From: Macrostomum lignano
Lineage: Eukaryota
DNA length: 64,000 bases
Assembly: GCA_002269645.1 (NCBI GenBank)
Contig: NIVC01000236.1
Coordinates: 496,001-560,000 of the forward strand
Reading direction: 5' to 3'
A model generated the notes under the pieces. That model saw only the letters and a program-made list of their open reading frames with translations, was not told where the DNA came from and made no database searches. The position numbers and the translations under genes were made by a program. This document shows, piece after piece, positions 11,837 through 25,924 of this stretch (position 1 is its first letter; every line of letters starts with the position of its first letter).

Positions 11837-14800
11837 ATGAGTGCTGACAAGATGGATTTTGAAAATAATAGTACATGATTATGCATTTTTCATATGAAAA
11901 ATCTAACTCAATAGAAGCGTGCACCCTATGTGTCCCCCCCCCTCTAAATCTATCACTGAACCTGGCCCTCTAGTTTTTGAAACATTCTTATACCTATTTT
12001 TTATGCCTATATCATTGACAATATATAGAGCAAAAATTGAAACACATTTATGGCCTTTTTCTAAATAATTGTCATAATTGAAACAATTTTTAGGGCAATT
12101 TTTTCAAAAGTTCAAAATTATTCAAACAAAAGCATGTCTTTGTCAAATGTATAAATATACAAATGTATAATCTTAAAAATGTGCAAAGACAAATATATTT
12201 GCAACCCTATTGGATCATTGCATATAGTATAGGGCCTATGCCTATGCAACTATAACCCTATCTCAGAGACATGTTTACAAGAGCTAGCCCCATAAAAAGA
12301 AAACTTTTAATAAATTAATATTCATAGGTCTCTAATTGTTATTAAATTAAATTTACATTGAAGCATTGTGCTCCATGGTATGACTTTTGCCAAAATGTCT
12401 TTTTGCTGATGTGACCTACACCCAAGAAAACTATTATTAAGACATTTTTATTTTGCTTTTCTATTTGAATTTGGTTAGAAGTCATATTTGGATACTTGGA
12501 TTAGGGCCTAGGCCTAATATTCAAACCTTTTTTTGGATATCCTAGCTAAAATTAACTAGTTCTTCATGGTTCAGTTAAATATTTACTACTTTTAATATTT
12601 TGGCCTACTATTTTTGCAAAGTTTATATTATAAACAAGCCTAAAATATAGTTTGCCATTTTTTGTTTTTGTCTTGGTACATTCTTTGTATGCGATATAAA
12701 TCCTTTGGCGTATATTGGGCAGAAGGGCAGATGCAGCATGCAGTAAAATTTCAAACTCAAGCAGCCAGGTAACTCAATTATCTTAGTACACCACCGAAAA
12801 ATTGTTGACGTTGAGGAAATACAACGACAAATGAGTATTGTATGGAAGGTTTGCAGTAATCTTGCCTTAGTGAATACAAAATTAACTAAATTGATGAAAT
12901 GACAAAAAAATGAGCATTCTTGTAGAAAGCAAAAAGCAAACAGCCTCCCAAAATTACAAAACTCATCATTGCAAGACTGACTGGTATGCGTTTTGTATTT
13001 TTTCCAGGAAACGAAAAGCCAATAGGATACAATTTTTTTTCATTTTTTGGCAACATACATTTACATCAGATTGTGTTTTTATTACAATTTAATTGACAGA
13101 CGCTATTTTTGTTTAAATGTTAAGCTGTACAGAACTGTACAGTTTGTTATACTTTTTGAACAAAAAATTTTCGAGGCCGCATACGAGCAATTATTTGCCA
13201 TGCTCCAGCCTCCAAGATCATTTCAAAAAAGCGGACGCTGAGCTGATATACTTATATAAAACTAAATACAAGTGTACGATTTTTATCTGTTCATATTCTG
13301 TCAAATTCGTCATCTTGCCTTGGCACTTTGTTACGCACCAATGTAATGCAAGCAATAGTGCATAACATCTTTTTACTTCACTTAAGTTTACCTTCTATAT
13401 TTTCATATGCCCATATATCCTTTTATGCTAGTTGGTAGTACTAGAATATATATTTCGAATTTAGTATTTTGGTAAGACACATTTTAGCTAAGGAATTGGA
13501 CGATTTCTTAGTTTGTTTTTCATGTGCACGCAATTGGACCACTTGCACGATTTTTAAGTTTTGCGTCCTTTAAGTCTTGTAGTCCTTGGTGCATGGTAGG
13601 TTGGTTTATTCAATATCGACCAATTTTATAACCCCCCCTCCCCCTTTACTTTGCTGCAAATAGAAATCGCCTAGAGAATTTTTTCAAACTTTCCAGCTTT
13701 TTTCGACTTCCGAATTGCATTAGTCTTCCTTTACAAGTGTCTAAGCGTAAGCAATACAGCTAGAGCAGGAAAGCTCGACGTACTACTAGGCGTGCAGCAC
13801 TAGAAAGAGGATTAAAGTTTAATTCGTATATTCGTATAATCGGCTAAAAAAGAAGCCAGGTAGATTCTAGGTAGACAGGTAGAGAGAGATGAGATTAAAA
13901 CTAATTATATTTTACTATATGCGTACATGTACATGTACGTACAATGTACATGCAAATTTACAGATTTTCATATGCAGTATAGGGATGAATTAAATGGGAT
14001 TAAACTGAAGCTGAAAACATATTTTGGAATGCAACAACGTGAACAGCAACGCAGCTGTAGTAGACTAATAAAACAGTATATTTAATTTTTACTTAATTGT
14101 TGTGAACATAATTAACAATATCCGTGTCGTGATTCTCATTAGACTTAACCTAGCTAATGGCCACAACACTGAATAAGGAGGCGAGATTGCTAGGTAGATA
14201 CGAGTACTTAAACGAGAGTAGGGTGCTGATTTATAAAATTTAAATAGGTCCAGAAAAAGTAATGCAAAATACTAAAATAATGCAGCAATTAAAACAGTCA
14301 AATAATCCTGCAACTACGAGTAATTATTTTTGCTATAATGTGCGGAATAAGAGATAGAAAGAAAAAACTAAAAAAGTTTGACTAGGTAAATATTTTTAAT
14401 AACAAATTGCAGACTTGCTTATAGAATGAACAGAAGCAACAACACTGCAGTAACTTGTAGAAGTTACCAGTCGTTGCTAAAAATATCGGGTAGGGAATAT
14501 CAATAGAGCTACTGAGCTGTAGGACTGCGAGACTATAGCTGATCGAATGACTATTAAAAATGATTGACACTCAACCAGATATTCAAATCTAAATAACTAA
14601 ATTTAGCTCATCAAACTATCATTCTATAGTTATCTATCATTCAAGCATTCATAAAGCGCCTTATTGCACAGAGTTACAAATTCAACAAAAGACTCAAACT
14701 TTTAAAAGTCAGAACTGATAAAGGGCAAGGAATGACTTAGTGATAACCAGAGTTCCCAAGTTCGGTTCTGGGGTAAAATGGCCTCAATTATTTGGGGTCC

Positions 14801-15045
14801 ACACACGGACAGTGCCAACTGGAAGGCCCAGAGTGTGCAGGAATACAAGCTTTGACATTGGCAATCAGGCCAGCAAAGCTGTACACCTGTGCGAGCGGCG
14901 CCTGCTCAGCGGAATGGGCTGACTGCGGGGATCCTAAACAACCTAAAATACTATCAACGCCTCGGTAATAAACTGGGTAATAAACTAATAAACGGTAATA
15001 AACTTAGTAAACCCATGCAACGTCTCGTTGCCAATGGCGACGCAG

Positions 15046-18000
15046 TCACATCTTCCCGCGCGAGAAATTCTCGTGCAGTCGGGGCTGCACATCGAACAGC
15101 AGAGTGAGCAGCCGGCGGATCGCCTGCTCCTTGTTCTGGCGCACGCTGCCGCTCAGCTCGCTCAGGCGCTGCCGGGTCTCCTCCTGCACCAGCTTCTCCG
15201 AGTCGGTGCGCGAGCCCAGGATGCGCGCCTCGTGCGCCTTGAACTCGCGCTCCCGCTCCAGCTTGAATGCCTCGATCTCGGCGGCAGCCTCCTGCTTGGC
15301 CTGCTTCAGGCGGCGCTGCTTGCCTGCGGACGACAGATGGAGTCTTCTTTTAGAAGAAGAGCGATGAGTTTGGAACTTATTCAACTTGCATAGTTGCAAA
15401 TTTGCAGCAATAGCAAATGCTAAAAACTGAAGACTTCAAAGTTACGGCTGCCATAAACTCGAGATTTGCAAATAAAAAAGCAAAACTTAAAATTGAAACA
15501 AAGTACACAAACAAATTTTCATGGGCTGACGCCATTGTCTAACCTTGAGGTTAAATCTGAGCCTGAGGTTGGACTGAAATTCAAGCCAGTCAGCTTTGTC
15601 CAGACCAAAGCTTTGTCCAGTCCACTCTGATTGCACTTCCCCACTGTGCCTACTGACAACAGTAGGGTATCAAGCGAATTACTGGCATGAAAGTTCTATT
15701 TTACAAGTATATGTAGGTATATGTACAAAGTAAATGTAGGAAGTCGAAGTCGGATTAATTTAAAGAAAAATATGCGATTTATTTTGAGTAAAAGTTACTT
15801 AGTGAAATACCGAACTGCGGGTTAGAATATTGATCGATAGGTTAATAAATTAGTGCTAAGCAGGTTCGTGACACAAAACCCTAGGCTCGCAAGAATACTC
15901 GTAGAAATTGGTTTGTTGGATCAGCGATTAGTGAATAACCAAAGAATTCAAACTGCAAAAAAATTAGTTTTATAGGAATCAGAGCAGTCAGCAGTTCAAT
16001 TAGTCAACAGGTATCAAAACTCAGGCTTTGCTGCCGCTTGGAACAGCTGTTGAACGAAGCTGACATTGAGACCACAGTGGGCAACTTCTTGTTTGTATGG
16101 AACTTCAACTGACACTTGTATAACCCAGCTGACACTTGTGTATAAATTGACACCCCAGCTGACACTTGTGTATAAATTGACACCCCAGTTGACACTATTG
16201 ACACCCAGCTGACACTATTGACACCCAGCTGACACTGTTGACACCCCAGCTGACATTATTGACACCCAGCTGACACTATTGACACCCAGCTGACACTATT
16301 GACACCCAGCTGACATTATTGACACCCAGCTGACACTATTGACACCCCAGCTGACACTATTGACACCCAGCTGACACTATTGACACCCAGCTGACACTGT
16401 TGACACCCCAGCTGACATTATTGACACCCAGCTGACACTATTGACACCCAGCTGACATTATTGACACCCAGCTGACACTATTGACACCCAGCTGACATTA
16501 TTGACACCCAGCTGACACTATTGACACCCAGCTGACACTATTGACACCCAGCTGACATTATTGACACCCAGCTGACACTATTGACACCCAGCTGACATTA
16601 TTGACACCCAGCTGACACTATTGACACCCAGCTGACACTATTGACACCCAGCTGACATTATTGACACCCAGCTGACACTATTGACACCCAGCTGACACTA
16701 TTGACACCCAGCTGACATTATTGACACCCAGCTGACAGTATTGACACTCAGGTGACACTATTGGACACCCAGCTGACACAGGAGATCTCTACACACTACG
16801 CACTGCATGCAGACTGCTGTACCCCGCAGCAAGCCTCGGTCAGCAGCGCCGGCCGGAGACCCAGTCGCCGCCCTTGAAGCTGCCGTAGCCGCAGTACCGG
16901 TGAGCGCGGCCCGACACCATCTCGGTGAGCACAGCCGAGTCCAACTTGATCCGGTAGCCGAACCACGAGCCGAACGTGGACTCGTCAGTCCAGCTGACCT
17001 CCAGCTTGGCAGGCGCCGAGGCGGCGAGGCTCCACCAGCCAGTGCAGCCGAAGACGCCGCGCTGCCGGGAGCCGGGACTCAGCCTGCGCTCATCGACAGC
17101 GAGTTTAACTGGGCCGCACTGCTTGCCGCCAGAGCTCAGCTGCACCTTCAGGCCGCCGGTTCGGCCCGACGGCGACTTGGAGGACAGGCGCAGGGTCACG
17201 TGATAGTGCACCACCGAGTACGGGGTGCAGGGACCCGTCAGCAGGTAGTAGCGATGGGGCAGCCGGGAGCCGGTGAACCGGGCCTTGTACTTTTCCGCGT
17301 CCAGGCCCATGACCGGGCAGCCGCCGCTGGGACAGTGGGAGCCGCAGTCGCCAGCCATGAACTTGTCGTAGTTGTCGCAGGGGAAAGCCGAGAACGCTTT
17401 CGATTTCGCGGTCTTCAGGGTGTCAATGTACAGCTGCGGGGCCCGGCTGTGATCGCAGGCGCCCAGCGAGGAGCAGCCGGGCTGGTGGCGGCCGCCGTTA
17501 ACAAAAAAATCCACGTGACCCACTGGAGACTGGATGCCGAAGCCGCCCTGCAGTGTCGGATGGGCAACCGATTCGTCGAGTTTTAGGCTGAAGAATCTGA
17601 GACTGGGAGCTGAAACCGCCCCATCTGAACTACAAGTTTGCAAACTGCGACATCATAAAAATCACAAGACGGCTGCGGCCACCCTGGCGCAACGCCTTCA
17701 GCAACATCGTCTCACAATCAGTGGTGAGGCCCTCAGGTTAGGTTAGGGTTGGCCCTCAGGCCTCACGGATGTGAATTGCACAAGCCGAAAATCCCAAATC
17801 AATGTGTTTGCGCACGGAATTGAGCCCGAAATCGTGGCGTGAGAGTCGAACCCGTTTACTGCTGAGCTGCTCAGCCCGGAAAACTGGCACAAACAAACGG
17901 AACCAAGGGACAAATCTGGAGTGGCAATCCCGCCAAGCACTCACGTTGAGCAGTGGCAGGCCGACCCGCCACAGCGCGCCGTCCGTGTGAATGGCGTCGA

Positions 18001-21000
18001 CAAACTTGGCGTCGGTGGGGTCCAGGCGCACCACCGGGTCCGTGCCCTCGAAGTACGGCCCAGCCGGGTCCAGGCCGGTGATGCGGCCCAGCGGGGTGCC
18101 CCTCTCCCGCAGGCGGCGGCCAACGTAGCCGGCGATGTGGCCACCCAGGCTGAAGCCGATGACGTGGACATTGTCCAGGTCAACGCCGAAGCGGCTGTGC
18201 AGCCAGCGAAGCATCCGGGCAACAACCGCGCCAACCACCCGAGTGTTGGACGTGGCCTGGTTGTACAGCGTGACGGATCCGCCGGCCCAGCCCACCTGAG
18301 AGGCAGGAAGAGCGGCGCTGTAGAGCTTCCACTGATTGAATACCATTACATATTTGCCTTGAAATCCATTGTCTTCACCACGCGTTAAACCTCTCGATGG
18401 TGTAAACAGACATCAGAATCTTTTAATTCGAGGCATGGATTATTCAACTGACAGCAGCGAATCGCACCTGAATCAAATTGCAGTCCACCCGCTTCAGCAT
18501 AGCCTGCCTGATGCGGTTCATCCAGCCCATGACGCCCTTGCCCAGGAAGCCGTGGATGACCAGCTTGGTCGGCCGCCTGTTGCTAAAGCGGGAGCGCAGC
18601 ACGGATTTGGCGTTTTTGTAGTGCAGCTCGGCCGGGCTGGCCGGATTCCGACGGGTGAACAGCAGGAACTTCGTGCCGATCACTTCTGGCGACTGCGGCA
18701 CGACAACCACGGGGCGGTGCAGCAGGTTGAAGTACTTTCCCTTGATGCTGAAGCAGCCCAGATCTCCGTAGCAGACGCTGGTCTTGACCAGGAACCTTTC
18801 GTCTTCATCGATGTCCTCATCGCCGTAGTCCGGAATGTCAGGCTCGACATACTTGTCCAGGTCGATGCTTAGGGTCGACAGCGGCGCGAACGTCAACAGC
18901 AGCGTCGACAGAAGCAGCAAAGGAAGGCGGCACTTCATCTTGAGCGTTTTGCTGGCGTCTCACTGGGTTTCTTCTATTCATTAGTTCATTATTTATAATG
19001 CGAGCTGGCGCCACTTAGCACCAAAGGGAGAGAGAGAGAACTCAAAAACACCGCGGAGTCCTAGACAACTCAGCTCTGAGCAACAAACTTAGCCATAAAA
19101 TTGCCCCATTAACGCATGAAAGATTGAGCAGATGAGTTGCTCAATTGAGATTGAGTTGACTGACCAAAGCATCTGATTCGTTTAACAAAAGAAGTGTGGT
19201 GCGTGGAAAAGTGAAAAATTTACAAAGTGCATTTCCCCGTACGGCTTGAAACCACCGGTGAGTGTTCGTACTAAACAGTACGCATGGTTACGAAAATAGC
19301 AAATACTAGCAATCTGCCCTGACCCCTTAGCAACTCCCCCATGAGCCTTGACATCTCAGCAACTCCCCCATGAGCCTTGACATCTCAGCAACTCCCCCAT
19401 GAGCCTTGACATCTCAGCAACTCCCCCATGAGCCTTGACATCTCAGCGATTCTCCTATGAGCCTTGACATCTCATTAATTCTTCCCGTGAGCCTTGTAAT
19501 CTTGCAGCAAATTCCAACGTAAATCATTGACATCCCAGAAGGACAACTCATTTTTAGTATTTGAACAGCAGTATACAAACTCTATAGTGGGTGGACTTTG
19601 TGGAAGTGTGCAGGGCGGCATTTTTTGTCAGGGGGAGGCAAGAGTCGCAAATCTAAGATACTGACCTCCTCGACCTCCCCTGAACGGATTCCCATAGCAG
19701 TCAATAAGCGATGATCTAAATGTAGGGGGGGGGGGGGCAGCTGCCCCTGTTCCTCGGTGCCTGTTGCAGTCCAGATCTCTAGCTTTAGGCGTCCCTGCCA
19801 GTAAAATGCAGCTACGTGCGCACGTTTTGTTGTTGCGCCAAAACAGCCCCCATTGAAACTCGATGCGCTTCGGTGAACACCTGCTCTGGTGAACAGCTTC
19901 TTCAAGCATGTTGCTTTAGCTTATTATCATATTAGCAGCCTCAGACCCCGGGCCTGTCTGCCTATTGTCCTGGCGAGACGGTTTTTATGACCCAGAGCTG
20001 CTTCAAACTTGGAGAGGGGGTCGCACGAGAGCATTGACGTTGCTGTTTACCACTATGGCCGCCCCGTCTTCAGGACTATTTTTGCCGTGCAGTGTTTTTG
20101 TTTAAATGTCGCCTTCAATAGGTTAAATAGATTAAATAGCTCGTAGATTCAAAACATTAAAAATGTATGCCGAAAAACATCTTATAACGTGTATCATAAT
20201 ACTTGTAGTAGGATACTACCAGTTATGCAATTAAGCAAGTTAAAAAGCAAATTTGCAGCATTTTGACAATAACCATGATTTGATGCACATAATATTAAAT
20301 TAACAAGGCCCATTTAGTAGCACTGCAAAAGTAACAAATATATTTTTATTTTATATTTGATTTGATAAACTTGAGTGAGAAAAAGCTCTTGTCAATTTTT
20401 TTAAGTTTTAGACCCTATGAAATATGTTAAATTCTTTTTTCAAAGGAAAAATATTATTTTCTAATTATAGGCTAGCCACCCAAATTCTAACTGATGACTT
20501 GCTACATGTACCTCCCTGTGCCTCCAAACTTAACAAAATTTCCCAGTTTAGGTTTACTACTTTGTCTTCTATTTAATCATAGGCATTATTTGTTTTTTAT
20601 CATTATCTAAATAATCTAATGCAACAAATACATTGTTATGGTAATAGTCTTTGAAAATTAATAAATAATATTATAAATTCTAGCTTTCTTTACACATGGG
20701 TAAAACAGCTCTACTACTAATTTTGCATACAAGGTCCCAGATAGTCTAATATTGTGTATGGCATTCATCAAATATTTGGCAAGGTTTTTTGGCATGTTCT
20801 AAGTAGTAGAATTATGTGTAACTTTTTTGTTGGCATGCCACAACTATCAGAGCTATGCAGAGGGCCAAAGAAGGTATTTTATTGTTGCAATTCCAAAAAT
20901 GTTTTTTTTATTAAAAAATGATTTGATAAAATGGTTTTTTATAGTTGCAACCATGAAATTTGTCCCATTGGTCTATTAGCACACACTAAGTGGATTTGAT

Positions 21001-23093
21001 CCAACCTTCTGGCATGCACTGTGTAAGGCAATAAAAATTCTCACATGCATATTATATACTCTGGACTATGGGCCTTAATTACTTTTATCACAGATAGAAC
21101 ATCTAGGCCTATTTAACTAGTCTTTAAAAAATAAAATAGGAGCAAATTTAATTTGCAAATGCTTGCTTTAAAATATAAAATAGTCAGTTTAACTGGTGCA
21201 TGTCTAAGGTGGCCATACACTAAGGTAGCCACAATATAGGCATTGCTTTAAATCAGCTTTTGCAAAGAGAAATAACTTTGTTTTAACTTCTTTAAATTAT
21301 ATTTGGCTTATTCTAGCTTCTAGCTAGGGTATAAAGAGGAGTCAAAAGACCATTTTGATGTCTAACTTTGACTATAGGCCTAATGAATAATTATAGGCCT
21401 AATTGTAAATAATATAGTATTGGTTATTCCAGTGTTGGGCACTTCCGTTACCGAGTAACTTGCAAATGGTAACGCAAGTTACTTTTTCGTAAAGCGTTCC
21501 TTACGCAAGTTACTTTTTTATTTTAGTAACGGAATAACGGTAAGTTACTCAAATTTCAGAAGTCCGTTACAGTTACTTTGCAACAATCGCAATATTTAAA
21601 TTTAAAACTGAAATGCTTAGCTATTACGCCGGTTGTCACATGTTTTTGCATTTTTCATTCCTAAATTCAAAACTAAGTGAATAGTATCATATGGTATTGC
21701 GCTTAATTAATGAAGGAATACTTGAAACATGTTTTACTTTGTTAATTTCGGTAAAATATTTTCGCCTTTCATTTTCGTTACTAAAAATTTTCAAGTTTGA
21801 TTCAAACAAACAACCAAAGAAAGAAATTCATCTGTAGCCTCCACAAGTCCCTCCACTGGCACTGCAGTACACTACACCATTTTATACAGTTCTATTTACT
21901 TTACTCTATTGAATTATTGATATTCGTTCATTTTATCATTTATAATTTTAATTATTGATTGCCATTGCCCATTGGTCCTTCTATTTGCCTCACATCGTGT
22001 CGCCAATTCCTGTCTCTGTCTGGTAATCGGTTAATCCCAATGCCCAATGGCAAATTTCGGTAACAACAATGTGAAAAAATGTGCAATGTGAAAAAAGCAG
22101 AAAATTTTGTTAATAACATGGGTAACGGAAGTGAGTAACGGACAGTAACTTAAAAGTTACCTGGTTTTTGTCTAAAGTTACTAGGCTAACGTAAGTTACT
22201 TATTAAAAATTGGTAACTTAAGTTACAGTAACGCAAGTTACTTTTTTTGAGTAACTTGCCCAACACTGGGTTATTCAAAAGCTAGGCCTATCCAAAACTA
22301 GATAGTTTGGCAAATAAGATATAGATTCAGAGATGAAGATAAGAGGAATTGATAAGAGAGAGAGCTTCTGTTTCTATACCCTCCTCTCAGCCTTCCCTCT
22401 TACTTCCCTCCCCTTCCCTCTTCCCTCAACATTGGTCTGTGCCCACCTTGGTCTGTCACTGTTTAACCAAGCATAGGCCTATAGCTAGAAATTTTCTTTG
22501 AGGCCACTAGAAATTATCTTTAGGGTGAGAGAAGATATATACTTAAAAAGCAGCCTTAAATTTTTTTGGGGGGGGGGAGTTACATCCCCTTTCCCCTCCC
22601 TACACCTCTGAGTTTAAACTTTTGGAACTTTTTATACTAGTTGAGATAGGCAACTTATTTCATAGAATAGGCCTAAAATGATATATGTATTAACTTTAGA
22701 ACTTTTTCTAGAAATGAAAAACTAGAAACATAATAAAATACAAACTAATAAATTATAAAAATGGTAGGCCTAGGCCCAAGCGGCCTAGGTTTAAAACAAA
22801 TAACTTACTTATCAATTTTATATAATTTAAAATATTAGTGTTAACTTATAATGTACACATCAATACTGCACTGGTATTGCTGGAAACCGTCAGCGAAAGT
22901 TATGCGTTAGAATTAAGTCTCTTCAGTCAAAGGATTTTCATGTATGCAATCCCAACCCAACGTCCTATTGTTTAGTAAAATTTACTTGTAAGTTGTAAGT
23001 TTCAGATTTACCTTTTCGAGCTTCCTCGATTTTTTCACGTGCTTTCTTCTCTGCTTGGAGAAGCTGTTGGATTCCACCAGTTTGAGTGTTCAT
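15046..23093 (-). CDS. ATP6V1G: V-type H+-ATPase V1 subunit G, 119 aa, 2 exons
   Basis: Exon 1 23093-23012 (82 nt, MNTQTGGIQQLLQAEKKAREKIEEARK+G|gtaaat) joins in phase 1 to exon 2 15323-15046 (tccgcag|GC AAG CAG; KQRRLKQAKQEAAAEIE...FDVQPRLHENF). Intron is 15324-23011. Confidence 0.88.
16109..16780. repeat. 20-bp minisatellite, ~30 copies
   Basis: Unit gacacccagctgacactatt, immediately 3' of the lipase stop codon. Confidence 0.96.
16840..18938 (-). CDS. Secreted pancreatic-lipase-family lipase/phospholipase with C-terminal PLAT-like domain, 509 aa
   Basis: Exons 18938-18468, 18295-17945, 17547-16840, all phase 0, GT-AG. Signal peptide, CYGDLGCF, IHGF, GFSLG (Ser), LDPAGP (Asp), VDAIHT, GHVDFFVNGG, ACDH (His). 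Confidence 0.95.
18991..18997 (-). promoter_or_regulatory. Candidate TATA box of the lipase gene
   Basis: TATAAAT on the minus strand about 53 nt upstream of the ATG; position is plausible but not proven. Confidence 0.45.
19327..19500. repeat. 29-bp minisatellite, ~6 degenerating copies
   Basis: Unit caactcccccatgagccttgacatctcag. Confidence 0.92.
21430..22268. mobile_element. Non-autonomous hAT-type DNA transposon (MITE), 839 bp
   Basis: 12-bp TIR CAGTGTTGGGCA / TGCCCAACACTG; 8-bp TSD ggttattc at 21422-21429 and 22269-22276; many subterminal gtaac/gttac motifs; no ORF. Confidence 0.92.
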
Positions 23094-23939
23094 TTTGTAT
23101 TGTTTAATTTTACGAATGCAGTTGTTGTTATTTAATACTTTAATATTTATTTAGGCAGTAGGGATAAGAATAAAAAAGAGTAATTAATCTGTCTGCTATA
23201 TACAATCACAAACATTAAAGTTAAACTTATAAAGCGAAGCAAATCTAAACGTTTAAACAAAAGTTCACAACCTTAACTGTAATAAATTTGCTTGACCTAC
23301 TTTAACTAGATAAAAAAAATTCTAAGGCTTTTAAAAAAAGAATGCAATAAGCTTAGTGGCGTGTATTCTATTAAGTTATTTTTCATTATTAAATTACCGG
23401 GCTTATTAAATTAAACTTGTCTCTTGCCAAAACTGCTTCGTACGTGTTTCTCTGGTCTCGACCGTGCCGGGGTTAAGTGATACGTACATTTACATGTACC
23501 ATTTATGTACATACGCTAGAGACTGCATGAATGACGAGTAGCAGCCGAGCCAGGATAAAATTACATGTAATTTATATTTAATTAGCCTTGAATAACACTT
23601 GCAAGATTCGCGTCGTTCTACCTTAAGTAGACGTGACTTTCATTTGAGACTGCAATCCATGCAATGCAGTCATAAATTTCAGTTTTCTTGACGCGCAGTT
23701 CCTGTAAGTTCCTGTTACAGGTTTGTACTGAAACACTGGGAGCTTAATGCCCTGAATATGCACCGTAGTACCTTCGGCCTTTCTTTTGCCGATGTCTGCT
23801 TGGCCACGTTTAACTTTACAGTATATTTATTCTACTTATTTCGAAGCGGTTTGCCTTTAGTTAGGCTCTTGTACTCAATACAGGCAAATGAAATAGTTTA
23901 TGATAATGCTTCAGTTAAAAATAAACTTACATCTGCTCT

Positions 23940-24168
23940 GGCAAAGCCATGCAGCACGCAGCACCTCTCCGCTTCAAAAGTTTACAGTTCATTCTTTGTA
24001 ATGTACTCTTGGCTCCAGATACGTTCCCTGGAGAACCAGAGCCGGTGCAGGAGCCGGAGCAGCAGCAACCTCGGAGAAGTGAAAGACTGTTGACTAAGTA
24101 AGAGTACATTACAAAGAATGAACTGTAAACTTTTGAAGTGGGGAGGTGCTGCGGGCTGGCTTTTGCCC
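23940..24168. repeat. Inverted repeat, ~70-bp arms with an 89-bp GC-rich spacer
   Basis: 23940-24010 is the near-perfect reverse complement of 24100-24168 (core cttcaaaagtttacagttcattctttgtaatgtactctt is identical). Confidence 0.9.
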
Positions 24169-25924
24169 GAGCAGTTCCTAGAGTACGAGAACAGATAAAT
24201 GAAGCACATGCACGTCGCACATACATACAGGGTACAAGGGAATAGCCAGCTTCCACCAGCATCAATTAATCTAACCGATCGCAATTCGGCGTACACATGC
24301 AAGCATGCCGGGCGGCCAAAAATTACGTGATACATTCTATAGATTTTAATTAAGTGCATGCCTAAAATATCAACAAGTTTAAAGTTAATTGGATTAAGGA
24401 ACAACTTTCATGTGACTTAATTGCATTAAGGAAGAACTTTCATGTGACTAACTACACAATTCTGTGCATTAATTTAACAAGTCGTGCTTCAGCTTACTTA
24501 CATCATGTACTTGCATGGCCTGTGGTGGCCCATGGAAGTTATACTGTAATATCAATGAGGATCCGTAGCACCACTTTTGTGTATGACCTTGAAATGAAGT
24601 TTCTCAGGGATTATTGTTTTTAGACCTAAAATCAATAAATTAACTCCCCTGAGTCCCCATGCTCCACAAAGTGAATATGGCGTGTCGCTGCCCTTCCTTA
24701 AAGTGCACATCCATGCAGGGACCACTCAATACACTACTGAATACTCTACTGAGTATCCCTGAATTCATGATAAGCGTTGGGAGCAGAAACTGGTCACTTT
24801 CCCTCAATATTTCAGCTTGTTGGATCCCTGCCAATTATCATTTTCGGCACGAGAAACTATCCTATGAAAATTTTGGATACTTACAGTATAGTGCTACTAA
24901 TTGTTTTTTTCTGAAAGCATTGAACAAATGTCAGTCAATAAAAGCAATAAGATCACAGTCAAGATAGGCACGCGGTTTGTTAAGAGTCTCGATCGGGATT
25001 GCGCTATTCGTGGCAGACATGGATTCAAAATTTATTTGTGATTGAATCACTGCTTTACTGCATAGCTACTGTCGGTAGAACATGAGACTCTTCAATTGCA
25101 TCAGCAGCCACAATTGAAATTGTGCCCAGCTTTCTGCTCAGTCTAATTTCAAGTTTAATAGCTTTATGATGGCTTAGCTGAATAGACATAAAGCTGATCA
25201 CTGATCACTCGGATGCGCACTTATTCTATTCCGATAATAGACTTGCTTTCACTAAGCAATCAAAAAGCTTGTCTTCAGGATTAACTCACGCAATTAAGCA
25301 TTAATATTAGTGTTGCGTCCCGTAAAAGTACGGCACTGCGGGAGCTCGGCAGCGTACGAAGCCACCAATTGTACATATAAAGAAAAAGACGGCGGATTCA
25401 TGCACAATCAAAATTGTTAATAATAGTTGCATGACTAATGCAAGTAACATTAATTAACGCCTTTGCTCCATACAGATGAGGGCACTAAACAAAGCCGAAT
25501 CCGCTAGCCGATCGTCAAGTTCGTCAAGTTGCAGTAACCATGGCAACAATAAATCTAAGGGATGCAGCTCAGCCGGAAAGCTAAACCGGGCATGTAAAGT
25601 GTAATGTGCTTTTTGGATTAAATTATTTAGCGAGTCAAATAGAGTCCAAGAGCGGGGCAGAAGCAATAGAGAGGATTATATTTAACTTAAGCCTGTCAAA
25701 TCTATGGGAGTGAAATAGAAAGCCGGATTTAAGAACGCAAGGAGCTACAGATAGGTAAGACAAAAACAAAGACAACAAACAAGAGAGGATACAACTATTT
25801 CTATCAGCATAGGAGCGCGAATCATTAAAGAGGGCATTTAGTGCGGGAGGCGGAAATCGGTGCCGTTAATCGCGAATCGGGCCAATCAGGGGATTCGGTG
25901 GCTTGGGCTCGCAAAATGCAGGGG

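What the first reader, a model, noticed from the sequence alone, without database searches (positions are those of the whole stretch)
15046..23093. Complete lipase gene nested on the same strand inside the only intron of V-ATPase subunit G
Seen: the two halves of ATP6V1G join in phase across a 7.7-kb intron. That intron holds a full 3-exon lipase gene in the same orientation, with its own TATA-like box and a candidate AATAAA near 15780. Established: nested genes are usually antisense to their host. Inference: the housekeeping transcript must skip four lipase splice sites and its poly(A) site; tissue-specific interference or chimeric ATP6V1G-exon1/lipase RNAs are possible.
Basis: partly seen in the sequence, partly recalled or inferred. 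Interest (0 to 1): 0.7.

Follow-up and report, generated by a model that had tools for sequence, protein, structure and literature searches.

The report
Lipase gene nested inside V-ATPase G intron
In the flatworm Macrostomum lignano a complete three-exon secreted-lipase gene really does sit, on the same strand, inside the single coding intron of a V-ATPase subunit G gene; the pair is already in the public annotation and is an uncommon but well-known kind of gene arrangement.

Summary
The window is Macrostomum lignano contig NIVC01000236.1, and both genes lie on the minus strand. V-ATPase G exon 1 (23093-23012) and exon 2 (15323-15046) join in phase to give a 119-aa protein identical to GenBank PAA87382.1. 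The 7,688-bp intron holds an intact three-exon pancreatic-type lipase gene of 509 aa (PAA87381.1).

The public annotation is built from RNA-seq and already shows the nested pair, here and on a second contig. A third, separately assembled copy has the same layout. Exons, all splice sites, the TATA box and the single AATAAA are conserved across the copies, while intron sequence differs by 4-5%. A misjoin is therefore excluded, and both genes look functional.

No other exon-1-like sequence exists in the 64 kb. A paralogous V-ATPase G gene has the same intron position but only 2 kb of repeats and no lipase.

The most likely reading is two independent transcription units, with the host transcript reading through and splicing across the lipase. 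Interference, chimeric RNAs and tissue specificity remain untested.

Same-strand, intron-containing nested genes are a minority class but are well documented. Interest is low to moderate.

The parts
23012..23093 (-). V-ATPase subunit G, coding exon 1 (27 codons plus 1 nt, ends in phase 1). AT-rich, GC3 0.33.
   Evidence: It is 100% identical in all three copies and matches the start of the GenBank gene span.
15324..23011 (-). The single coding intron of V-ATPase G (7,688 nt), GT...AG. It contains the lipase gene, two minisatellites and a MITE.
   Evidence: A paralogue has an intron at the same position and phase (1,982 nt).
15046..15323 (-). V-ATPase subunit G, coding exon 2 including the stop codon. 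GC3 0.93.
   Evidence: tblastn with human G1 gives E 3e-24.
18468..18938 (-). Lipase coding exon 1 (471 nt), with a signal-peptide-like N-terminus.
   Evidence: The protein is 509/509 identical to the body of PAA87381.1.
17945..18295 (-). Lipase coding exon 2 (351 nt). It holds GFSLGGH (the nucleophile Ser) and GLDPAGP (the Asp).
16840..17547 (-). Lipase coding exon 3 (708 nt including the stop). It holds the catalytic His (CDHSRA) and the C-terminal domain.
18990..18997 (-). TATAAATA, 59 nt upstream of the lipase ATG. Candidate core promoter of the nested gene.
   Evidence: conserved in all three copies. The deposited lipase CDS in this contig starts only 9 nt upstream of the ATG ('partial'), so the RNA-based transcript model starts close to here.
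15778..15783 (-). AATAAA, the only canonical poly(A) hexamer between the lipase stop and V-ATPase G exon 2, followed by a T-rich stretch. It implies a lipase 3' UTR of about 1.06 kb and lies about 455 nt upstream of the host acceptor.
   Evidence: The surrounding 200 nt (15924-15727) are 99-100% identical in three copies, against 91-96% in the neighbouring stretches.
16176..16779 (-). 20-bp minisatellite (30 copies) in the presumed lipase 3' UTR. Its length differs among the three copies.
19329..19496 (-). 29-bp minisatellite, 400-560 nt upstream of the lipase ATG. There are 5.8 copies here and about 17 in the other two copies.
21430..22268 (.). 839-bp hAT-like non-autonomous transposon (MITE) in the host intron, with 12-bp perfect terminal inverted repeats CAGTGTTGGGCA and an 8-bp target duplication GAATAACC. 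It is present only in this copy.

Best explanation
This is a genuine same-strand host/nested gene pair in Macrostomum lignano, made of two separate, functional protein-coding genes.

The nested gene encodes a secreted pancreatic-lipase-family enzyme. The Ser-Asp-His triad is kept and the lid is deleted. It is most likely transcribed from its own TATA-containing promoter just upstream of its ATG, and its RNA is most likely ended at the conserved AATAAA at 15783.

The host gene encodes V-ATPase subunit G. It is transcribed from upstream of 23093. RNA polymerase II reads through the whole lipase unit, and the exon-1 donor is joined to the exon-2 acceptor 7.7 kb away, removing the lipase as part of the intron.

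Host transcripts that use lipase splice sites or the lipase poly(A) site would be out of frame or truncated, and are presumably lost. A second V-ATPase G paralogue without a nested gene probably lowers the cost of such losses.

Shown: the structure, its conservation, the coding integrity of both genes, and the RNA-based public gene models. Inferred: the independent promoter, poly(A) site use, read-through, and the fate of mis-spliced RNAs.
For: - In-phase join and family matches.
- The window is identical to GenBank NIVC01000236.1.
- Deposited models show V-ATPase G (PAA87382.1) containing the lipase (PAA87381.1) on the same strand. The same is seen on contig NIVC01002213.1 (PAA59909.1 and PAA59910.1).
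- That annotation was built only from RNA evidence: StringTie/TACO transcripts, a mapped de novo transcriptome, trans-splice and poly(A) reads, and TransDecoder (PMC5730564). The exon 1 to exon 2 junction therefore rests on transcripts.
- Three separately assembled copies are collinear.
- Differences between the window and the other copies: V-ATPase G exon 1 0%, lipase CDS 0.6-0.85%, V-ATPase G exon 2 1.8% (4-5 synonymous against 0-1 non-synonymous changes). By comparison, lipase introns differ by 3.9% and the AT-rich intron by 5.4%.
- All six splice sites, the TATA box and the AATAAA are conserved.
- No consensus SL acceptor [T/C]TNCAG lies within 300 nt upstream of the lipase ATG (motif from PMC8629364).
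- The deposited lipase model starts 9 nt upstream of the ATG.
- The catalytic triad aligns with human pancreatic lipase 1LPA at E 7e-81.
- The paralogue P0002 (three loci) has the same intron position but no lipase within 22 kb.
Against: - I saw no RNA reads myself. The transcript support is second-hand, through the published annotation method.
- With three near-identical copies, it is not known which copy or copies supply the reads.
- By first-come splicing logic, the strong acceptor of lipase exon 2 (CTCTTCCTGCCTCTCAG|G) should compete well with the host acceptor. How efficiently it is skipped is unknown.
- Lipase non-synonymous changes are about as numerous as synonymous ones among copies (3-7 against 3-6), which suggests relaxed constraint. 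The numbers are small.
- In the third copy (L001) the lipase is intact but was not called in the annotation.
- The TATA box lies 59 nt from the ATG and the transcription start has not been mapped.
Confidence: 0.72

Rival explanations
1. One promoter, two products. The lipase mRNA is cut out of the V-ATPase G primary transcript, either by spliced-leader trans-splicing (operon-like) or by sharing the host's 5' exon. Each primary transcript then yields either the lipase (cleavage at 15783) or V-ATPase G (read-through and splicing), as at the cholinergic ChAT/VAChT locus.
For: - M. lignano trans-splices about 30% of its genes and has about 15% in operons (PMC8629364).
- The lipase poly(A) signal lies upstream of host exon 2, so the two outcomes would be mutually exclusive for any one transcript.
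Against: - No [T/C]TNCAG acceptor and no pyrimidine tract lies within 300 nt upstream of the lipase ATG.
- A conserved TATAAATA sits at -59.
- The host exon-1 phase is incompatible with the lipase exons, so a shared coding exon gives early stops.
- The lipase ATG is 4.1 kb from host exon 1, far beyond the roughly 100 nt to 1 kb operon spacing reported.
- The two proteins have no obvious functional link.
Confidence: 0.1
2. The nested arrangement cripples this V-ATPase G copy. Most host transcripts are captured by lipase splice sites or its poly(A) site, and the real housekeeping supply comes from the paralogue with the 2-kb intron. On this view the nested-host copy is a low-output or tissue-restricted gene, possibly on its way to loss.
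For: - A paralogue exists at three loci, 82% identical in protein, with no nested gene.
- It carries a consensus trans-splice-type acceptor (GTTGCAG) 76 nt upstream of its ATG.
- In Drosophila, hosts of same-strand intron-containing nested genes are less often essential (PMC3814207).
- The lipase exon 2 acceptor is strong.
Against: - Exon 1 is 100% identical, and exon 2 changes are nearly all synonymous, across copies whose introns differ by 4-5%. That indicates continuing purifying selection.
- The RNA-based annotation recovered the spliced 119-aa model at all three loci.
- All reading frames are intact.
Confidence: 0.15
3. Assembly or annotation artefact. Either a misjoin placed an unrelated exon 1 upstream of a lipase plus exon 2 block, or exon 1 belongs to another gene copy.
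For: There is a striking composition break inside the gene: exon 1 GC3 is 0.33 and exon 2 GC3 is 0.93.
Against: - Three separately assembled contigs with different transposon and minisatellite indels share exactly the same order and splice sites.
- There is no second exon-1-like or exon-2-like sequence anywhere in the window.
- The paralogue also has an AT-rich exon 1 (GC3 0.41 against 0.62), so the break is a trait of the gene family here.
Confidence: 0.03

Closest known systems
Same-strand intronic nested (host/nested) protein-coding gene pairs, as catalogued in Drosophila (Lee & Chang 2013, PMC3814207), human (Yu et al. 2005 as cited in PMC3192792) and mouse/human (PMC11694760)
   Same: A whole protein-coding gene lies inside one intron of another, with no exon overlap, unrelated functions and a narrowly specialised nested gene inside a broadly needed host. 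The predicted hazards are mis-splicing, premature polyadenylation and transcriptional interference.
   Different: It belongs to the rarer sub-class. It is on the same strand (29% of Drosophila nested genes) and contains introns (only about 27% of same-strand nested genes there). The host is also very small, with two coding exons and 119 codons, so the nested gene fills the only coding intron. The organism uses spliced-leader trans-splicing, which has not been examined for nested pairs.
Cholinergic gene locus (VAChT inside the first intron of ChAT; unc-17/cha-1), PMC3053374
   Same: The nested gene lies in the 5'-most intron of the host. By my own knowledge, not tested here, the orientation is also the same.
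   Different: VAChT is a single exon, is functionally coupled to ChAT and shares promoters or 5' exons with it. That arrangement is conserved from nematodes to mammals. Here the nested gene has three exons and its own TATA box, and has no evident functional link to the host. The arrangement is absent from the paralogue. A shared 5' exon was not testable.
Spliced-leader operons of M. lignano and C. elegans (PMC8629364)
   Same: Neighbouring genes on the same strand, which one primary transcript could traverse.
   Different: Operon genes are arranged in tandem, about 100 nt to 1 kb apart, and the downstream gene has an SL acceptor. Here one gene lies inside the other's intron, 4.1 kb from the upstream exon, with no acceptor motif at its 5' end.
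Pancreatic lipase family members with a mini-lid (guinea-pig PLRP2, PS-PLA1/wasp venom PLA1-type enzymes)
   Same: PF00151 fold, the Ser-Asp-His triad, and an 18-residue deletion exactly where human pancreatic lipase has its lid.
   Different: Substrate preference was not tested. The C-terminal 120 residues do not reach the Pfam PLAT threshold. The link between a short lid and phospholipase A1 activity is from my own knowledge.

Membership tests
V-ATPase subunit G (PF03179) | Profile match above the curated threshold over nearly the whole ~115-aa protein | tested here: met
   107 bits against a cut-off of 28.6, residues 4-106 of 119. 47-67% identity to human G1 by tblastn. 46-54% identity to vertebrate G2/G3.
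V-ATPase subunit G (PF03179) | Intact reading frame and purifying selection | tested here: met
   Intact in three copies, with 4-5 synonymous against 0-1 non-synonymous differences.
Pancreatic lipase family (PF00151) | Profile match and the Ser-Asp-His catalytic triad in GXSXG / GLDPA / C-x-H contexts | tested here: met
   300.9 bits. GFSLGGH, ITGLDPAGP and ACDHSRA align with the triad positions of 1LPA at E 7e-81.
Pancreatic lipase family (PF00151) | Full-length lid loop between the two lid cysteines (classical triglyceride lipases) | tested here: not met
   There is an 18-residue gap in the alignment to 1LPA between GCSS and LGAC. It therefore resembles the mini-lid subgroup rather than classical pancreatic lipase.
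Pancreatic lipase family (PF00151) | C-terminal PLAT/colipase-binding beta-sandwich (PF01477) | tested here: inconclusive
   No PF01477 hit at E<=0.001 for residues 385-509. Many homologues carry it. No structure prediction was run.
Same-strand intronic nested gene pair | The nested gene lies wholly within one host intron, on the same strand, without exon overlap | tested here: met
   The lipase, from the TATA box at 18997 to the AATAAA at 15778, lies inside intron 23011-15324. Both genes are on the minus strand.
Same-strand intronic nested gene pair | Both genes supported by transcripts as separate mRNAs | tested here: inconclusive
   Separate RNA-based public models exist at two loci (method). 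I could not inspect reads, 5' ends or 3' ends.
Same-strand intronic nested gene pair | The arrangement is real and not an assembly artefact | tested here: met
   Three separately assembled collinear copies.
Spliced-leader operon | Downstream gene preceded by an SL acceptor ([T/C]TNCAG) within about 1 kb of the upstream gene's 3' end | tested here: not met
   No motif lies within 300 nt upstream of the lipase ATG, and the ATG is 4.1 kb from host exon 1. The motif and spacing come from PMC8629364. Only about 44% of known sites carry the motif, so this is not decisive.
Spliced-leader operon | SL-containing reads at the 5' end of the downstream gene | not testable with these tools
Cholinergic-locus-type nested pair | Shared promoter or 5' exon, functional coupling, and a single-exon nested gene | tested here: not met
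   The nested gene has three exons. The host exon-1 phase is incompatible with them. The functions are unrelated. Sharing of a non-coding 5' exon could not be tested.

The most novel reading that the evidence does not exclude
The nested lipase acts as a cell-type switch on its host. In lipase-expressing cells (for example gut or gland cells), promoter activity, splice-site capture or cleavage at 15783 shuts down this V-ATPase G copy, while the intron-poor paralogue takes over. The nesting would then have driven a division of labour between the two V-ATPase G paralogues in a trans-splicing animal.
Probability: 0.1. Interest if true: 0.5.

Novelty: new member of a known kind. Interest (0 to 1): 0.22.

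Why it matters
The result is mostly of local value. It is a clean, conserved, triple-copy example of the least common class of nested genes: same strand, with introns, inside an essential-type host.

It occurs in the only flatworm with routine transgenesis. Reporter or minigene tests of read-through, splice-site skipping and poly(A)-site suppression are therefore feasible there.

It also explains a chimeric 'V-ATPase_G + Lipase' entry in UniProt (A0A1I8GCF6) as a prediction artefact. It does not reveal a new mechanism.

Tried and rejected
- Alternative first exon. tblastn with the window's, the paralogue's and the human exon-1 peptides at E up to 100 found nothing but 23093-23010. Rejected.
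- Misassembly. Rejected by three collinear copies.
- A hidden RNA gene or exon in the intron. There were no Rfam hits at E<=0.1 in 14000-24500. The well-conserved GC-rich stretch 20082-19687 has frame-breaking indels among the copies and no convincing ORF. The whole GC-rich block is simply less diverged than the AT-rich part.
- Gene identifiers in the literature and in one paper's supplements (Mlig034080, Mlig012681, Mlig009743): no occurrences. No paper mentions both 'Macrostomum' and 'nested gene'.
It was reached instead through the cluster look-up.
- My third homology search was meant to learn the locus tags of the upstream eIF4G-like gene, to see whether it shares a transcriptional-unit name with the lipase model 'Mlig002264g1'. 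It returned nothing at E<=1e-30 and was wasted.
- Synteny in other Macrostomum species or other flatworms could not be examined.
Full report
**What is there**

All features lie on the minus strand. V-ATPase subunit G exon 1 runs 23093-23012 (82 nt, donor AAG|GTAAAT). Exon 2 runs 15323-15046 (acceptor TCCGCAG|GC). Joined, they give a 360-nt open frame of 119 codons. This matches Pfam V-ATPase_G over residues 4-106 (E 9e-31).

Inside the 7,688-nt intron lie three exons with GT/AG borders and phase-0 junctions: 18938-18468, 18295-17945 and 17547-16840. They encode a 509-aa protein with a hydrophobic signal-like N-terminus. It matches Pfam Lipase (PF00151) at E 1.8e-89.

Aligned to human pancreatic lipase (1LPA, E 7e-81), it keeps the Ser (GFSLGGH), Asp (GLDPAGP) and His (CDHSRA) of the triad. 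It lacks 18 residues at the position of the lid.

A TATAAATA sits 59 nt upstream of the lipase ATG (18997-18990). The only AATAAA between the lipase stop and host exon 2 is at 15783-15778.

**Where it comes from, and whether it was already known**

The V-ATPase G protein is identical to GenBank PAA87382.1 and PAA59909.1 of the flatworm Macrostomum lignano (BOX15_Mlig012681g1 and g2). The window is identical over 28,048 nt to contig NIVC01000236.1 of assembly GCA_002269645.1.

In that public record the 119-aa gene spans exactly the 8,048 nt of the finding. A 512-aa lipase product is annotated inside it on the same strand (PAA87381.1, 'partial', equal to my 509 aa preceded by TLK). On a second contig (NIVC01002213.1) the same nested pair is annotated (PAA59909.1 and PAA59910.1). 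On a third (NIVC01000003.1) only the host is annotated (PAA94716.1), although the lipase is intact there.

The annotation was derived solely from RNA evidence (PMC5730564). The sources were genome-guided StringTie/TACO transcripts, a mapped de novo transcriptome, trans-splice and poly(A) read peaks, and TransDecoder ORFs. The exon 1 to exon 2 join and the separate lipase model thus rest on transcripts, although I could not see the reads.

No paper in the searchable library mentions these gene identifiers, or nested genes in Macrostomum.

**Is it an artefact?**

No. Three separately assembled copies are collinear from the upstream eIF4G-like gene to the downstream glycosyltransferase gene. They differ by private insertions:
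- an 839-bp hAT-like MITE at 21430-22268, found only in the window (8-bp target duplication GAATAACC);
- a roughly 3-kb insertion 106 nt upstream of exon 1, found only in L001;
- different minisatellite lengths.

Differences between the window and the other two copies are as follows.

| Region | Difference |
|---|---|
| AT-rich part of the intron | 5.4% |
| Lipase introns and upstream region | 3.9% |
| Lipase coding sequence | 0.6-0.85% |
| V-ATPase G exon 2 | 1.8%, almost all synonymous |
| V-ATPase G exon 1 | 0% |

All six splice sites, the TATA box and the AATAAA with about 200 nt around it are conserved. Both genes therefore look functional in every copy.

A tblastn search of the whole 64 kb with three different exon-1 peptides finds only 23093-23010 (E 4e-15; the next best is about 1). 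There is thus no alternative first exon near exon 2.

**Origin**

A paralogous V-ATPase G gene (PAA51337.1 and others) is 116 aa and 82% identical. It is present at three other loci with different neighbours. It has an intron at the same codon and phase, but that intron is 1,982 nt of repeats. No lipase-like sequence lies within the 14.5-22 kb of DNA fetched around each locus.

The intron therefore predates the nesting, and the lipase was acquired by, or retained in, one paralogue only. The lipase keeps its introns, so it did not arrive by retroposition. Its nearest relatives within M. lignano that are not versions of this same gene are only about 40% identical, so no recent donor copy is visible.

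**How it most likely works**

The sequence supports two independent transcription units. The lipase has a conserved TATA box. No consensus spliced-leader acceptor ([T/C]TNCAG, PMC8629364) lies within 300 nt upstream of its ATG. The RNA-based model begins only 9 nt upstream of its ATG in this contig. It also has a conserved canonical poly(A) signal.

For V-ATPase G mRNA to be made, polymerase must read through that signal, and the exon-1 donor must skip two lipase acceptors. One of these is strong (CTCTTCCTGCCTCTCAG|G). This is inference from anatomy.

The host intron contains four more sense-strand AATAAA hexamers, so ignoring such signals is routine for it. Suppression of intronic poly(A) sites by U1 snRNP is established knowledge that I did not test.

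Every chimeric combination gives a stop within 44-280 codons. The combinations tested were V1+L2+L3, V1+L3, V1+L2+V2, L1+V2 and L1+L2+V2, where V is a V-ATPase G exon and L a lipase exon.

The paralogue without a nested gene may buffer any loss of output. This fits the Drosophila finding that hosts of same-strand, intron-containing nested genes are less often essential (PMC3814207).

**Rivals**

- A shared-promoter or operon-like model, as at the ChAT/VAChT locus (PMC3053374), is disfavoured. The TATA box, the missing acceptor motif, the 4.1-kb distance and the phase incompatibility all argue against it. It cannot be excluded without 5'-end reads.
- A 'crippled host copy' model is disfavoured by the purifying selection on both host exons.
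- Misassembly is excluded.

**Comparison with what is known**

Nested genes make up about 10% of Drosophila genes. Of these, 71% lie on the opposite strand, and 72.5% of the same-strand ones have a single exon (PMC3814207). In human, about 63% are on the opposite strand and about one third of protein-coding nested genes are tandem (PMC3192792). A 2024 survey of mouse and human found only a slight orientation bias (PMC11694760).

The present case falls in the minority class: same strand and multi-exon. It is a documented kind, and its expected consequences (exonisation, intron retention, premature polyadenylation) have been described (PMC3192792).

The one public 'fusion' protein is UniProt A0A1I8GCF6, with V-ATPase_G and Lipase domains. 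It joins lipase exon 3 to host exon 2 through cryptic sites inside both exons and partly retains lipase intron 1. It looks like an ab initio artefact provoked by the nesting.

**Verdict**

This is a new, already annotated but undescribed member of a known kind. Interest is 0.22. The most novel reading still open is a cell-type switch between the two V-ATPase G paralogues, driven by lipase expression. I put its probability at about 0.1.

Noticed in passing
window 23093-23012 versus 15323-15046: There is an extreme composition break inside one small gene. V-ATPase G exon 1 has GC3 0.33 and exon 2 has GC3 0.93. The lipase (0.86) and the neighbouring eIF4G-like exons (0.69-0.86) are GC-rich too. 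The paralogue shows a milder version (0.41 against 0.62), so an AT-rich first exon seems to be a trait of this gene family here, and exon 2 of the nested-host copy has been driven strongly towards GC.
   Followed up: partly
window 21430-22268 (target duplications at 22269-22276 and 21422-21429): An 839-bp hAT-like non-autonomous transposon with 12-bp perfect terminal inverted repeats (CAGTGTTGGGCA) and an 8-bp target-site duplication GAATAACC. It is absent from the two other copies of the locus, so it is a recent insertion into the host intron.
   Followed up: partly
L001 and L005 versus window 23011-15324: The three copies are mosaics. L001 and L005 are nearly identical (0-0.15% different) from exon 1 to the lipase introns, yet about 3.3% apart between the lipase 3' end and V-ATPase G exon 2, where all three copies are equidistant. 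This suggests recombination or gene conversion between copies, or haplotype switching in the assembly.
   Followed up: partly
UniProt A0A1I8GCF6 (P0021), mapping to window 18938-15046: A public 517-aa 'Lipase domain-containing protein' carries both V-ATPase_G and Lipase Pfam domains. It is a chimeric model that partly retains lipase intron 1. It then splices from inside lipase exon 3 (after ...VVHYH) to 8 nt inside V-ATPase G exon 2. This is very likely a gene-prediction artefact caused by the nesting.
   Followed up: partly
window 17500-17430 (lipase exon 3, residues ~300-310): The lipase lacks 18 residues where human pancreatic lipase has its lid loop, while keeping the catalytic triad. This is the pattern of mini-lid members of the family, which tend to be phospholipase A1 or galactolipase-like (family knowledge, not tested).
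   Followed up: partly
L001 6937-9895: A roughly 3-kb insertion with no ORF of 120 aa or more lies only 106 nt upstream of the V-ATPase G start codon in this copy. If the copy is expressed, its promoter is very compact, or the mRNA 5' end is made by splicing or trans-splicing from far upstream. A pyrimidine tract followed by TTAAAG or TTTAAG sits about 45 nt upstream of the ATG in all copies.
   Followed up: partly
window 16176-16779 and 19329-19496: Two minisatellites flank the lipase coding region. One has a 20-bp unit in 30 copies in the presumed 3' UTR. The other has a 29-bp unit in 5.8 copies upstream of the promoter, against about 17 copies in the other two loci. Both vary in length among the three copies.
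   Followed up: partly
L001 13788-16005: The lipase gene is intact in this third copy (509 codons, all splice sites present) but is not called in the public annotation of that contig.
   Followed up: yes
window ~1-800: A tandem array with a period of about 40 bp showed up as repeated weak tblastn hits (translated units such as RLQRQSRKRQANQAAAA).
   Followed up: no
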